A stretch of DNA of 63,815 bases, the filler included, from Hyphochytrium catenoides (lineage: Eukaryota > Protista > Hyphochytriomycota): NCBI GenBank assembly GCA_900088475.1. It is 10 parts of 10 records of this genome, joined end to end, with 100 filler letters (N's around TTAATTAATTAA, not from the genome) between each part and the next. Parts side by side here need not be neighbours in the genome. Positions count along the whole stretch, not along the records: positions 44,856 to 48,757 come from FLMG01001663.1; 9 more parts are not named here. One strand, written 5' to 3'. The number at the start of each line of letters is the position of its first letter. Position 1 is the first letter of the stretch. A program made the position numbers and the translations under genes. This document shows, in pieces, positions 44,656-48,757 of the stretch. Below the pieces are notes generated by a model. The model was not told the origin of the DNA. It was given only the letters and a program-made list of their open reading frames with translations, and made no database searches.

Positions 44656-45329
44656 TCAAGGAAGGGAGCCACGTTATATTGGAGCAACTCAGGAGTAGCA
44701 CTAGACGGGAAGACTGGTAGAGAGTCATTGCAAAAGAGAGAGAGAGAGAGAGAGANNNNNNNNNNNNNNNNNNNNNNNNNNNNNNNNNNNNNNNNNNNNT
44801 TAATTAATTAANNNNNNNNNNNNNNNNNNNNNNNNNNNNNNNNNNNNNNNNNNNNCTCTCTCTCTCTCTCCCCGTCTCTCTTTCTAAGAGCTTTCCTTTG
44901 ACACGGTGACGGTTCAACATCTCACCGGCGAAGGTTTAGAACGAATCAAAATTTCCCTAAACGTTCAAACCGTTAACTAAGGCGGTTAATGTTCTGAAAG
45001 TGGAGAGAGGAATTGTTGGGTGTTTTATTTTAATAGTGGAGCTATTTCAGATTATGGTTCGTTGGGACATCTAATATGCACTTCACCAACCAATTTTCTG
45101 CTGTTGTAGTTGTTGTTCTCGTTTCTAAGTTGCTCTGGGTTTGACGATTGTCTGTGATTTTATCTTAACACTTAGGATTCTACGGTTAGTGGGTGATCTA
45201 TCTGTGGTGTGTTTGTTGGAATACGACGCGTACAGAGGAACTTCAACTTGGATCCTCGTCAGTCGTTAGAAGATGTTTAGGAGAAAGGAAGAGCTCAGGA
45301 TTCGAAAGGCCAGATACCGACTTCCTTCC

Positions 45330-45363
<34 letters not shown>

Positions 45364-46205
45364 TTCTCTCTGTCTCTCCCTCCCTTTGGGTCTCTCCCTT
45401 TCTTTATATCTCTTCTCCCTTTATCTAGCTCCCTCTTTGTCGACCTCTGTCTCTCTCTTCTCACCGCACTTTCTCTCTCGTCTCTCCCTCCGTCTTGCAT
45501 TCGGCCCTTTCATCATCTCCCTTTGTTGGCTCTCTCCTCCTTTTATGAAGACTCTCTCTCTCCTGTAGAACTGGGAACCCCTGTACATGTAGGGCAAAAC
45601 GTACCCTTAGTAGAAGTCTAATTAGAAATAAGCATAGTCACCTTCCATATTTGGGGCTATGATTATCCCATTTATCCAGAACAGAGGTATCTGCCTAAGC
45701 CTAACCTAATGCTTGAAGCTCTATCGCCCTTCTGTCGCAAATAACATACGCTAAACTCCTTAGTAGACAACCTTTTAGCGAGTATTGTTGATAAGTGGGT
45801 ACATGGTGCTTTAAGCTGCAGTTGTCCAGACGAAACTGCCAGCTTGAAGTACTCACTCCTTCGCGCGCTGGTCACTGTTTTGGTTTTTCAAGAGGAGGGA
45901 GACCAGTAGCAGGAGCATCACAATCTTCGAGACCAGCAGCAGGAGCATCACAATCTTCCCTTTCATCACCGCAAGCCAGAGATTCAGTAGCGCCACTCTA
46001 CTATTGGATGGCAAGAAGCAGCAATTGAAGCCTGAATGAAGTTCATTGCTTGTTTTTCTGCCCTCTGGTGCGAACCCGTCCTCTCATCTTCTCCAGAGGC
46101 AGCACAGAAACAAAAAGAGCAGTAAATAGTCGTACTACTAACGGGCCCAAGAACTACTTCTGCCGTCATAGTACCGTTGTTGTCGTCATCATTTGAACTG
46201 CTGTC

Positions 46206-48757
46206 ATGCGGGACTCACGCAATAGAGCCGGTAGAGGGGGCAGAGGAGGTGGAAGAATAGGCACTCGTACCCAGCAGGTTTGTGGGAGATGTCATCGCCC
46301 TGGCCATAACAAGAGGAGGTGTCCGCTGATTGGACAACCACCAAGGACAGACCGTCATCCTCCTCCTGACACAGCGCTGCAAGACAATGTGCTTCAGAGA
46401 GAGGCAACCACGGAGAGAACGGCTGAGCGCCAACAAGGACAGCAGCAGCCAGAGCATGCAGCACGGCGAGGGGATGGCCAGTCACCCCCGTTCAAAGGAG
46501 AAAATGTCAATGTACATCTAGAGTACCTTCGAGATCTAGAATCTACTCTTCGGCGAGAGCTTGACATCGGCACCGGAGCGGGAGCAGGCATCAGTGCTGT
46601 GGCTTGGTTCAAAGCGAACGTGTCGAATGGCTGGTGGCTTTATCCTCACAGAAGAGGCTACTCCTATATGGGAGATCCACACCCAGCTCCATATTGCCTT
46701 CCACCAGTATTCCTCTGGTTTCCCTCATTTAACTATCCTGCAGATTTACCAGGTTACAAGCTCCCCTGCCCTGAATGTAGATCAACCGTTAGGGTCCGGA
46801 GCGATGGAATTAACCCCAAGGTAGAGTAAGATTTTGTTCTCCCTAATATCCAATATTTCCTAGTGGGAAACAGCCTTTCCAGCTACTATGGACAGTAATC
46901 CCTTTATTCCTTTCCTCAGGGTTCGCGCACAGTGTCGGGCATGGAGTATAACTATCTAGTCCTGTGCAGAAGATTTCGATGCGATGCAGAGCACGGACCC
47001 AAAAAGTCTCCTCGAACCTTTAATGCTTATGATCAGGAAGTGCTGAGACAGTTGCCGCTACATATACGTTTGGAGTTCCCAGCAATGCTGTCTAGGAAGG
47101 CTGGCATAGACAAAGCCCTTGTTGAGACAATGATGTCCTTAGTTGCTTCCAGTGGCGGCGGTGGCTTTGGAACCTTTCATCACCTCATTGTTGAAAGGCA
47201 CAAAGAAAACTGGCTGAAGCGCTATGGGGCCTGGGCTTCTACTGTAAATGAGGCTAGACAAAAGAGTGATATACGACGCTATTTTCAATCTGCGGAGTCA
47301 GAGCTCATTCACACTCCAAAACGCTTCCCAGCCTTTGAGGATAAGAATGGCTTTGGTGGCTCCGTTCCTAGCGTAGAGTACCTAAAGTGCATGGGAAAGC
47401 GGTGGCTTGCACAAAGAGAGGCTGGTCTGGATAGAAGGCAGCAACTCTACCATGCAGACGTAGGTCGATCTCCAGCTCTCTCCATTTTTGTTAGTGATCA
47501 AGTACCATTCTTGCGCCCAACGGCCTAACAAACCCATTTTTGTAGGTAATCAAGGCCGACGGCAGCTTCAAGCTGCCTAAGGTGATTCACACTCCTGACG
47601 GTAGAGAGCTAGAGGAGCTGTACACTGTCCAAAACGGGCTAGGGCAAGTTCTAAATCAGTCATTCTTCGAAAGCCAGGAAGTGGATCTGAAAAAGCCCTT
47701 TATCGAAGGGCTTGCCATGCGCCACGATGGGCATGGAGTGCCGAGACCCAGAGTTTGTTATATTGATAAATGCTGCAGGTAAGTAGGGATCGACCAAGGA
47801 ACAGCATAGCCTCCCATCTCCCTTTTCCGGCCACAACCTATGTCTTAGAGTACCGTTATTGCCTCTCTCAAATCAATAGTTCTCTGTTTAGATGGCAGGG
47901 GTCTTTCTTACCTATGAACTCTCAGTCACTCTCTTCGTAGCTTGCCAGGGGCCTTGCCTCTCCTGCCACTATTATCTCTCTCTCTTCTCGTCAATTTTAT
48001 CCTGACCTGAGTCAACGCCCCGTCTCACCTTCGCTCTTCTATGACACCTCACAGCAAAGAAGCCCAACTATGGCATGAAGTATTTGCAAGTAGTGATCAG
48101 AGCCACGGAGACAGGGCAAACAATACCAGAGGCCGCCAGAGGACTAAGAAAAGGCTGATTCTTCCCGCCAGCGCTAAAGTTGTGCCGCTGACAACAGAGT
48201 TTCTTATTGCTCAAAAATGTAGGGAGATAATGGACTTGGCAGACAGTATCACGGAATATAATGATGGCATACCGGGCGATGGTGAAAAAAAGAAGCTTCG
48301 CCTTATTTTCGACGTAAAGTGGCCCATTGTGCACCACGGAAAAAGGCAAAAAGTGTCACTCATCCAAGTTGCTATCCTACCCTCTCCTGGAGACGGGGTG
48401 GATGAGCACTCTTCTTCTCCTCTGCCCTCTATATATCTCTTTCACCTGCATCGACTGAGCAGCCTATTGGCCATCAGGAACGTCTTCTCTCACGGTGGGA
48501 TTGAGAAGTATTGCTTTGACTTATCTCGGTTGAGAAAAATGCTCAACGAAGATCACTCTATTCAGCTCTGCAATGCCCGAGATATCTCGTCCCTGGCTTA
48601 CTTGCGAGGGTTCTGTGATAGAGTCACCTCTTCTTTTGAGGAATTATGTGGAGAGGTGCTTGGGTGTGAGGTTGACCTCCCACTCGAGATTATGTATAGC
48701 GACTGGTCCGGAGAAGCCCGCCGTGCTCTGCAAGATGGTGCAGAAGACCTAGCTCCT
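46206..48757 (+). mobile_element. Dada-like DDE transposase gene (CCHC knuckle, core, inserted DnaQ/WRN-type exonuclease); exons 46206-46820, 46920-47459, 47546-47778, 48055->48757; truncated
   Basis: CGRCHRPGHNKRRC; VFLWFP..LPCPEC; QLPLHIRLEFPAMLSRKAGID; PSVEYL; first catalytic D in VIKADGSFK; LYTVQNGLGQV; second D in YIDKCC; then exonuclease-like IFDVKWP..VSLIQVA..YLFHL..SDWS. Confidence 0.7.

What the first reader, a model, noticed from the sequence alone, without database searches (positions are those of the whole stretch)
46206..48757. Spliced Dada-like transposase carrying a degenerate DnaQ exonuclease insert
Seen: three in-phase GT-AG introns join a CCHC knuckle, a Cys-containing core, D1 (KADGSFK), D2 (YIDKCC) and a WRN-like exonuclease domain, with no stops. 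The ExoI D-x-E is D-V-K and no clear ExoII Asp is present. Known (from memory): Dada DNA transposons target tRNA/snRNA genes or microsatellites, and some fungal and brown-algal members carry a DEDDy exonuclease between D2 and DxxH. Inference: either a new target-specific Dada lineage whose exonuclease became a binding module, or a domesticated gene. No tRNA or snRNA fragment is visible upstream; the contig begins in (CT)n, so targeting of the abundant GA/CT repeats is a testable idea.
Basis: partly seen in the sequence, partly recalled or inferred. Interest (0 to 1): 0.75.

Follow-up and report, generated by a model that had tools for sequence, protein, structure and literature searches.

The report
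Dada transposase gene with dead exonuclease
This is the front two-thirds of a spliced gene for a rare "Dada"-type jumping-gene enzyme whose built-in DNA-trimming (exonuclease) module has lost its active site; it is a correct and tidy annotation, but an incomplete single copy of a known kind of element.

Summary
Four exons (46206-46820, 46920-47459, 47546-47778, 48055-48757) joined by three GT-AG introns encode, in order:
- a canonical CCHC knuckle;
- the Pfam DUF6729 region;
- the first half of an RNase H-like DDE core, with both aspartates;
- a WRN-like DEDDy exonuclease fold.

Each exon, searched on its own, matches the same proteins in the same order, with no gap at any splice junction. These relatives include Plasmodiophora brassicae proteins with DUF6729, D, D, an intact DEDDy exonuclease, DxxH and GTNSLEG. 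They have the published architecture of the exonuclease-bearing Dada transposons (Dada-1/2_LB, Dada-1_ES).

The exonuclease is catalytically dead. ExoI is D-V-K, the ExoII Asp is Leu159, and no ExoIII Tyr appears in any register. The conserved Lys and Arg of the K-x4-R-x-S-x-W motif are also gone, while the fold is kept (AF2 pLDDT 82; best PDB match WRN exonuclease). The DUF6729 part scores like a typical family member, so the decay is confined to one domain.

The contig ends inside ExoIII. DxxH, the catalytic E, the termini, the target and the copy number are therefore all unknown. Whether this is a mobile element or a domesticated gene cannot be decided here. Microsatellite targeting is untested, and the two Dada papers read do not attribute it to Dada. 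I file it as a new member of a known kind.

The parts
46206..46820 (+). Exon 1 (205 codons). It holds the start Met, an Arg/Gly-rich tail, the CCHC knuckle, a low-complexity linker, and the N-terminal part of DUF6729 ending in the C-P-E-C pair (C188, C191).
   Evidence: Translation. Pfam DUF6729 is weak here (profile 30-89). phmmer to P0018 gives 7e-12 and to P0016 gives 1e-11, over residues 140-205.
46281..46322 (+). CCHC zinc knuckle, C-x2-C-x4-H-x4-C (C26, C29, H34, C39).
   Evidence: Regex match. Similar N-terminal C-x2-C...H-x4-C/H motifs occur only in P0005, P0010, P0032 and P0112 among relatives of 500 aa or more, apart from one different mid-protein motif in P0145. Pfam reported no zf-CCHC match at E<=1.
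46821..46919 (+). Intron 1, GT..AG, 99 nt, phase 0.
   Evidence: Sequence. There is a stop at 46827-46829. The junction is gap-free against homologues.
46920..47459 (+). Exon 2 (180 codons): the C-terminal part of DUF6729, which is the conserved N-terminal region of Dada transposases.
   Evidence: Pfam PF20499 at E 7e-10, above the cut-off. There are 241 hits in 1.84 billion proteins, the best at 1e-16. It scores 143 bits against a family HMM, the 75th percentile of members. It keeps 10 of 12 strongly conserved columns.
47460..47545 (+). Intron 2, GT..AG, 86 nt, phase 0.
   Evidence: Sequence. The junction is gap-free against homologues.
47546..47778 (+). Exon 3: the first half of the RNase H-like DDE core. 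D1 is codon 47558-47560 (VIKADGSFK). D2 is codon 47765-47767 (YIDKCC). They lie 69 residues apart.
   Evidence: phmmer to P0005 gives 3.5e-13. D5 and D74 are the only invariant columns of 30 sequences. The AF2 model has pLDDT 91 with b1-b2-b3-a1-b4, D5 on b1 and D74 just after b4. The published Dada-U6_DR spacing is 68 residues, D567 to D635.
47779..48054 (+). Intron 3, GTAAGT..CAG, 276 nt, phase 2.
   Evidence: Sequence. CC|S|KEAQLW aligns without a gap to CCSEREVW of P0005.
48055..48757 (+). Exon 4, cut by the contig end: a linker followed by a WRN-like DEDDy-fold exonuclease domain (about 48296-48757). Its active site is lost: D86 is kept, and E is replaced by K88 (48317-48319). The ExoII D is replaced by L159 (48530-48532). 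No ExoIII Tyr is present.
   Evidence: Pfam PF01612 at E 0.01, below the cut-off. The only PDB sequence hits are WRN exonucleases. In the ESM Atlas, 29 of 30 neighbours carry PF01612. The family exonuclease HMM gives 54 bits, E 1e-16. The AF2 model has pLDDT 82, and Foldseek's top hit is 2fbv (WRN exonuclease) at E 1.3e-9.
44856..46205 (.). Upstream 1.35 kb. It holds (CT)n at the contig start (44856-44885), a CT-rich tract (about 45333-45560) and a 30-bp tandem duplication (45899-45958). There is no recognisable gene, tRNA or snRNA. It is not known whether any of this belongs to the element.
   Evidence: Upstream ORFs have no Pfam match.

Best explanation
The piece carries the 5' two-thirds of a gene for a DDE transposase of the Dada superfamily, of the clade that has a DnaQ/WRN-like exonuclease inserted after the second catalytic Asp.

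Shown:
- The domain order is N-terminal CCHC knuckle, Dada-specific N-terminal region (Pfam DUF6729, with its Cys cluster), b1-b2-b3-a1-b4 of the RNase H fold with D1 and D2, then a DEDDy-fold domain.
- The transposase parts are conserved at normal family level.
- The exonuclease has lost its active site. The ExoI Glu is Lys88, the ExoII Asp is Leu159, and no ExoIII Tyr is present.
- The conserved Lys and Arg of its K-x4-R-x-S-x-W motif are also replaced, by Leu208 and Met213. The hydrophobic core and the predicted fold are kept.

Inferred:
- The protein would bind DNA through the knuckle and the DUF6729 zinc cluster.
- It would cut and join DNA with the DDE site, the rest of which (DxxH, E) lies beyond the contig end.
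- The exonuclease insert no longer trims 3' ends. It survives as a structural insertion domain of the catalytic core. Most Dada transposases have no such domain at all, so its activity is dispensable.
- The gene is most likely part of a transposon copy that is, or recently was, functional. It is less likely a host gene.
For: Family assignment:
- Pfam DUF6729 matches exons 1 and 2 collinearly.
- HMMER of exon 2 against 1.84 billion proteins gave 241 relatives. The long ones carry DUF6729 plus PF01612.
- Exons 1, 3 and 4, tested independently against those hits, match the same proteins in order. Best E values are 7e-12, 3.5e-13 and 1e-7.
- Splice junctions are gap-free in the alignment.
- Relatives P0006, P0081, P0043, P0024 and P0151 carry DxxH (for example KDIFHLMD) and GTNSLEG downstream of the exonuclease.
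- This matches Dada-1_LB in the published alignment motif for motif: GIDHSHK, FTDN, the exonuclease, KDIFHVF and RGTNFTEG.
- The paper states that the Laccaria and Ectocarpus Dada carry a DEDDy exonuclease between D2 and DxxH.

DDE core:
- D1 and D2 are the only invariant columns in the alignment.
- They sit on b1 and just after b4 in the model.

Exonuclease:
- The fold is confirmed.
- The catalytic columns read D-K-L, against DEDYD in 22 relatives.
- It keeps 7 of 17 conserved columns, against 10 of 12 in exon 2.
- It scores 54 bits, against 92-104 for intact relatives over the same partial range.

Still an open gene: about 703 codons with no stop or frameshift, and consensus splice sites.
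Against: - The contig ends in ExoIII, so DxxH and the catalytic Glu are unseen. The transposase could be incomplete.
- There is no second copy, terminus, TSD or target, so mobility is not shown.
- The best relative is only about 32-35% identical, so no dN/dS or synteny test is possible.
- The fourth Cys of the Dada zinc cluster is not in either usual position: Ser30 and Glu24 of exon 2. About two-thirds of relatives have a Cys at one of those positions. His25 might substitute.
- Foldseek hits for the 77-residue half-core are not significant. The best is E 0.045, although integrases, IstA, RNase H and PIWI dominate the list.
Confidence: 0.6

Rival explanations
1. It is a domesticated Dada-derived host gene, like dDada of cyprinid fishes. 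On this reading the protein is kept for DNA or RNA binding, or some other non-transposition role, and the dead exonuclease serves as an interaction module.
For: - The ORF is intact across four exons, and decay is confined to one domain.
- No close paralogue or relative above 35% identity was found in 15 billion proteins.
- There is precedent for Dada domestication (PMC8869645).
- There is precedent for exonuclease-like folds of this kind in binding or adaptor proteins. Exd1 and Egalitarian appear among the fold hits. That they are catalytically inactive is from memory, not tested here.
Against: - D1 and D2 are intact, whereas in dDada the D residues are often mutated.
- The conserved Lys and Arg of the exonuclease's K-x4-R-x-S-x-W motif are lost too.
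- No orthologue, synteny or expression data exist.
- The absence of close relatives may only reflect a poorly sampled host.
Confidence: 0.25
2. It is a dead, decaying transposon copy. On this reading the exonuclease substitutions are neutral decay and the protein has no function.
For: - At least three, and probably four, of the five DEDDy residues are lost.
- There is a 17-residue insertion in the exonuclease.
- One zinc-ligand position is not Cys.
- Other relatives also show degenerate exonucleases: P0027, P0036, P0042 and P0078.
Against: - About 703 codons are open, and all three intron boundaries are consensus.
- The exon 2 region scores at the 75th percentile of the family and keeps 10 of 12 conserved columns.
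- D1 and D2 are kept.
- Neutral decay deep enough to erase the exonuclease site should also have produced stops or frameshifts and eroded the other domains.
Confidence: 0.13
3. It is not a transposase at all, but a host WRN/Mut-7-like exonuclease gene with unrelated N-terminal domains.
For: Databases name the relatives only '3'-5' exonuclease' or 'SANT domain-containing protein'. Pfam sees only DUF6729 and PF01612.
Against: The D1-D2 half-core and the downstream DxxH and E motifs in relatives match the published Dada alignment. The exonuclease is the least conserved part here.
Confidence: 0.02

Closest known systems
Dada-1_LB and Dada-2_LB (Laccaria bicolor) and Dada-1_ES (Ectocarpus siliculosus): Dada transposons with a DEDDy exonuclease (Kojima & Jurka 2013, PMC3706591).
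   Same: The domain order is the same: the Cys-cluster N-terminal region, D1, D2 with a D-N/K-C-C type motif, then a WRN-like exonuclease directly after D2. The genes contain introns.
   Different: - The published ones keep all four DEDD residues. Here only the first Asp is kept.
- Here a canonical CCHC knuckle sits at the N-terminus. The paper describes a C-terminal CCHC finger.
- The 3' part, termini and target are not available here.
Plasmodiophora brassicae CEO96649.1 / A0A0G4INA1 (P0151, 1445 aa; its shorter model P0001 is the best exon-2 hit), annotated '3'-5' exonuclease'.
   Same: It has DUF6729, D1, D2, PF01612, DxxH and GTNSLEG in the same order. It is 32% identical over exon 2.
   Different: Its exonuclease is an intact DEDYD. 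Its exonuclease is too far from the window's for BLASTP to align them.
Unnamed Logan-assembly proteins P0005, P0008, P0010, P0016 and P0112.
   Same: They are the best matches for exons 1, 3 and 4. P0005, P0010 and P0112 share an N-terminal CCHC-like knuckle.
   Different: All five keep DEDYD. Identity is only about 30-40%. Their ORFs stop before a DxxH/E region, which may be an artefact of ORF calling.
dDada, the domesticated Dada-U6 of Cypriniformes (PMC8869645).
   Same: It is a Dada-derived coding sequence with lost catalytic residues.
   Different: In dDada the DDE aspartates and DxxH are mutated, and the locus is shown to be orthologous across fishes. Here D1 and D2 are intact and only the exonuclease insert is dead. 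Orthology is unknown.
WRN exonuclease domain (PDB 2fbt, 2fbv, 2e6l).
   Same: It is the best structural match (E 1.3e-9, TM 0.58/0.69) and the only sequence match in the PDB. The F-D-x-x-W-P start of ExoI is shared.
   Different: WRN has D82, E84, D143, Y212 and D216 (residue numbers from memory). The window has K at the Glu, L at the ExoII Asp and no Tyr.

Membership tests
Dada superfamily of DDE transposons | Conserved N-terminal region with a CCCC zinc finger (covered by Pfam DUF6729). | tested here: met
   PF20499 matches exon 2 at E 7e-10, above the cut-off, and continues weakly into exon 1. C188, C191 and exon-2 C21 are present. The fourth Cys is not at either usual column, though His25 is nearby, so the finger itself is 3 of 4.
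Dada superfamily of DDE transposons | First catalytic Asp on b1 of an RNase H-like core. | tested here: met
   D5 of exon 3 (47558-47560) is invariant in 30 sequences. It lies on strand 2-7 of the model.
Dada superfamily of DDE transposons | Second catalytic Asp about 68 residues later (the D-N-C-C type motif). | tested here: met
   D74 of exon 3 (YIDKCC) is invariant, 69 residues after D1. The published alignment shows VDNCC and ADNCC. Dada-U6_DR has D567 and D635.
Dada superfamily of DDE transposons | DxxH motif after the second Asp. | not testable with these tools
   It lies downstream of the exonuclease in relatives. The contig ends at 48757, inside ExoIII.
Dada superfamily of DDE transposons | Third catalytic residue (the Glu in G-T-N-x-x-E). 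| not testable with these tools
   It lies beyond the contig end. It is present in relatives P0006, P0081, P0043, P0024 and P0151.
Dada superfamily of DDE transposons | Repeated element with 6-7 bp TSD, inserted in a tRNA or snRNA gene. | tested here: inconclusive
   ARAGORN and Rfam (E<=1) find no tRNA or snRNA in 44856-48757. The element's ends are unknown and only one copy is available.
DEDDy (DnaQ-like) 3'-5' exonuclease, PF01612 | DnaQ/RNase H-like exonuclease fold. | tested here: met
   The AF2 model has pLDDT 82. Foldseek hits WRN exonuclease at E 1.3e-9, then EXD2, Nibbler, RNase D and Rrp6. The family HMM gives 54 bits.
DEDDy (DnaQ-like) 3'-5' exonuclease, PF01612 | ExoI D-x-E. | tested here: not met
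   The motif is D86-V-K88. The column is Glu in 89% of relatives, and WRN has FDMEWP.
DEDDy (DnaQ-like) 3'-5' exonuclease, PF01612 | ExoII Asp. | tested here: not met
   Leu159 sits in the Asp column in the family alignment and in the WRN alignment. Asp155, four residues upstream, would need a 4-residue deletion to align.
DEDDy (DnaQ-like) 3'-5' exonuclease, PF01612 | ExoIII Y-x3-D. | tested here: not met
   The last 15 residues (EARRALQDGAEDLAP) contain no Tyr. The MAFFT register gives Ala and Gly, and the ungapped register counted from Trp217 gives Ala and Ala. The contig ends here, so the register is uncertain.
zf-CCHC zinc knuckle | C-x2-C-x4-H-x4-C spacing. | tested here: met
   CGRCHRPGHNKRRC at residues 26-39. 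This is a pattern match only, with no Pfam hit at E<=1.
Domesticated Dada (dDada-like) | Mutated DDE/DxxH residues plus a single-copy orthologous locus. | tested here: inconclusive
   D1 and D2 are intact. DxxH and E are unseen. Orthology cannot be tested with one short contig.

The most novel reading that the evidence does not exclude
The window belongs to an undescribed Dada sub-lineage with an N-terminal CCHC knuckle, shared with P0005, P0010, P0032 and P0112. In this organism the exonuclease insert has become a catalytically dead structural domain while the transposase stays active, or the whole protein has been taken over by the host. Either way it would be the first case of a Dada protein that keeps its DDE aspartates but has silenced its exonuclease.
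Probability: 0.3. Interest if true: 0.5.

Novelty: new member of a known kind. Interest (0 to 1): 0.35.

Why it matters
- Dada is a rare superfamily, of interest because its members insert into specific small-RNA genes. Its exonuclease-bearing branch was described from only two organisms.
- This piece and its 241 database relatives show that the branch is much wider. They also show that the uncharacterised Pfam family DUF6729 is the N-terminal region of these transposases. No paper in the searched library mentions DUF6729.
- The exonuclease active site has been lost repeatedly while the rest of the protein stays conserved. That bears on what the exonuclease does in transposition: it is apparently dispensable.
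- For this particular locus the value is mainly a correct annotation.

Tried and rejected
Searches that found nothing useful:
- Word-based protein search with exon 4 and with exon 2 found nothing in the allowed length range. With the near-group alignment it returned only the query member.
- NCBIfam found nothing.
- BLASTP of exon 4 against P0001 gave no alignment of the exonuclease domains. A family HMM was needed.
With A2 it found two short metagenome contigs (L001, L002) that do not reach the exonuclease or the 3' part. It found nothing in bacterial/archaeal genomes or viral contigs.
- Foldseek on the 77-residue half-core gave no significant hit.

Ideas dropped:
- I first thought the nearest relatives (P0005, P0008, P0010, P0016, P0112) truly lack DxxH and E. 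P0001, which looked the same, turned out to be a split gene model whose sibling P0151 has both motifs. The truncation is therefore probably an ORF-calling artefact.
- Asp155 (FDLSRL) as the ExoII Asp is rejected. The ungapped match IEKYCFDLSRLRKML to ITKYGRAISQDAKRL puts Leu159 in the Asp column.

Tools and steps not available:
All searches were exon by exon, by reference.
Full report
**What is there**

The piece 44856-48757 is eukaryotic DNA. On the + strand, four open stretches are linked by three GT-AG introns:
- exon 1, 46206-46820;
- exon 2, 46920-47459;
- exon 3, 47546-47778;
- exon 4, 48055-48757, which runs off the contig.

Introns 1 and 2 lie between codons. Intron 3 (CAG|GTAAGT ... 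CACAG|C) splits a Ser codon after its second base. Each intron contains an in-frame stop. The ATG at 46206 follows an in-frame TGA by four codons.

Every search used one exon by reference.

**Is the model real?**

Pfam places DUF6729 on exon 1 (weak, profile 30-89) and on exon 2 (E 7e-10, profile 114-209), in order. It gives a sub-threshold PF01612 match on exon 4.

An exhaustive HMMER search with exon 2 found 241 relatives, the best at 1e-16 and about 32-35% identity. The long ones carry DUF6729 followed some 200 residues later by PF01612.

That set was chosen with exon 2 only. Exons 1, 3 and 4 were then tested against it independently and hit the same proteins in the same order. For P0010:
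- exon 1 residues 141-204 match 216-280;
- exon 2 residues 2-176 match 283-458;
- exon 3 matches 463-539;
- exon 4 residues 82-221 match 604-743.

The best E values are 7e-12, 3.5e-13 and 1e-7. In the alignment the exon ends abut with no gap at any of the three junctions. The spliced model is therefore confirmed by homology.

**What family**

Several relatives continue after the exonuclease with a DxxH motif (for example KDIFHLMD) and a G-T-N-S-L-E-G motif. These are P0006, P0081, P0043 and P0024, plus P0151, the long model of the best hit, from Plasmodiophora brassicae.

This is the layout of the Dada superfamily as published. Dada has a DDE triad with DxxH after the second D and an N-terminal CCCC finger. 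In the Laccaria and Ectocarpus elements a DEDDy exonuclease sits between D2 and DxxH (PMC3706591).

The published alignment of Dada-1_LB shows the same run of motifs:
- the Cys cluster;
- FPAYL..R.G.S;
- GIDHSHK;
- FTDN;
- the exonuclease;
- KDIFHVF;
- RGTNFTEG.

The D2 motif D-N-C-C occurs in other Dada entries. I compared these by eye and could not feed the supplement into a tool.

In a 30-sequence alignment the only invariant columns are the window's D5 and D74 of exon 3, in KADGSFK and YIDKCC. They are 69 residues apart, against 68 in Dada-U6_DR.

An AlphaFold model of exon 3 (pLDDT 91) gives b1-b2-b3-a1-b4, with D5 on b1 and D74 just after b4. This is the first half of an RNase H-like core. 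Foldseek on this half-domain is not significant, though integrase cores, IstA, RNase H and PIWI domains dominate the list.

DUF6729 is thus the conserved N-terminal region of these transposases. No paper in the library mentions the name.

**The exonuclease**

Exon 4 matches an HMM built from 13 relatives' exonuclease domains at 54 bits. Its only PDB sequence hits are the human and mouse WRN exonucleases. In the ESM Atlas, 29 of 30 neighbours carry PF01612. Its model (pLDDT 82) matches WRN exonuclease best (E 1.3e-9), followed by EXD2, Nibbler, RNase D and Rrp6.

The catalytic columns read DEDYD in 22 relatives. In the window they read as follows:
- D86 is kept.
- K88 stands in place of Glu.
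- L159 stands in place of the ExoII Asp.
- No register gives a Tyr in the last 15 residues before the contig end.
- The final Asp survives only in one forced register.

Gly153, Lys208 and Arg213 of the family consensus are also replaced, by Cys, Leu and Met. The last two belong to the K-x4-R-x-S-x-W motif. Core leucines are changed conservatively.

Overall, 7 of 17 strongly conserved columns are kept. In exon 2 the figure is 10 of 12, and exon 2 scores at the 75th percentile of the family. Intact relatives covering the same partial range of the exonuclease score 92-104 bits, against 54 here.

The decay is therefore specific to the exonuclease. The fold is kept but the chemistry is gone.

This is not unique. 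P0027, P0036, P0042 and P0078 also have degenerate sites, and P0036 combines this with a well-conserved DUF6729 region.

**How it most likely works**

Shown: the domain order, the two aspartates, the dead exonuclease site and the intact reading frame.

Inferred: the protein is a Dada transposase that binds DNA through its N-terminal knuckle and the DUF6729 zinc cluster, and that cuts and joins with the DDE site. The exonuclease insert, which most Dada transposases lack altogether, is retained here only as a structural insertion domain.

The idea that it became a nucleic-acid binding module is weakened by the loss of the conserved Lys and Arg. That these line the substrate cleft in DEDDy enzymes is from memory.

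**What cannot be said**

The contig ends inside ExoIII, so DxxH, the catalytic Glu and any C-terminal finger are unseen.

The 1.35 kb upstream holds (CT)n, a CT-rich tract and a 30-bp tandem duplication. It has no tRNA, snRNA or recognisable ORF. The element's ends are unknown, so this says nothing about a target.

The two Dada papers I read attribute microsatellite targeting to non-LTR elements and CryptonV, not to Dada.

Mobile element, domesticated gene (precedent: dDada) and dying copy cannot be separated with one short contig:
- The intact ORF and the normal conservation of the transposase parts argue against long decay.
- The intact D1 and D2 argue, weakly, against a dDada-like domestication.

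**Relatives and placement**

On exon 2 alone the window sits on a long branch beside P0002, near but not inside the group P0005, P0008, P0010, P0016 and P0112. That tree rests on a short region, and I did not assess its support.

Exons 1, 3 and 4 match that group best. An N-terminal CCHC-like knuckle right after the start Met is found only in the window and in P0005, P0010, P0032 and P0112 among the long relatives, apart from one different mid-protein motif in P0145.

These proteins come from unnamed Logan assemblies. Their ORFs stop before any DxxH/E region. The same appearance in P0001 proved to be a split gene model, so I do not read it as a real truncation.

**Verdict**

The piece is a divergent, truncated member of the exonuclease-bearing Dada transposases with a catalytically dead exonuclease insert. 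The more ambitious readings (new target specificity, binding module, domestication) are untested. The piece does not look human, and nothing here called for a referred step.

Noticed in passing
Pfam PF20499 (DUF6729); relatives P0001-P0150: DUF6729 corresponds to the conserved N-terminal Cys-cluster region of Dada transposases, directly upstream of the first catalytic Asp. No paper in the searched library mentions DUF6729. Public names for relatives are only '3'-5' exonuclease' or 'SANT domain-containing protein'.
   Followed up: partly
P0005, P0008, P0010, P0016, P0112 (Logan assemblies): The nearest relatives are single ORFs of about 770-1050 aa. Three of them (P0005, P0010, P0112) carry an N-terminal CCHC-like knuckle. 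All five stop shortly after a W-x3-[RKLN]-V-[RSG] motif, without a recognisable DxxH or catalytic Glu. They share a W-D-x-S-[VI]-D-x-x-F stretch where DxxH might be expected. This may be a conserved intron or ORF-calling artefact, or a real truncated lineage. Their DNA could not be fetched.
   Followed up: partly
P0027, P0036, P0042, P0078, P0034 (relatives): Several family members have degenerate exonuclease catalytic columns (DADSE, NSQAE, DLQYR, QSGYR). At least P0036 has a well-conserved DUF6729 region as well. Loss of the exonuclease site seems to have happened repeatedly in this family.
   Followed up: partly
window 45899-45958: A 30-bp unit (GAGACCAGCAGCAGGAGCATCACAATCTTC) is tandemly duplicated at 97% identity, about 250 bp upstream of the start codon. 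Its meaning is unknown.
   Followed up: no
window 44856-44885 and about 45333-45560: There is (CT)n at the contig start and a 230-bp CT-rich, polypyrimidine tract 650-870 bp upstream of the ATG. Whether either marks an element boundary or a target cannot be told from one copy.
   Followed up: no
L001 (Ga0209550_10167737, 1541 nt) and L002 (JACCDR012253448.1, 1591 nt): These are two short public contigs encoding relatives of the near group. L001 is 48% identical to P0005 over residues 318-461. Both are too short to show the exonuclease or the 3' part.
   Followed up: no
P0001, P0152 and P0151 (Plasmodiophora brassicae): One annotation of the P. brassicae locus splits the Dada-like gene into two models: XXQ31558.1 (1030 aa) and XXQ31557.1 (389 aa). 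An older model, CEO96649.1 (1445 aa), spans DUF6729, the exonuclease, DxxH and the Glu motif.
   Followed up: yes
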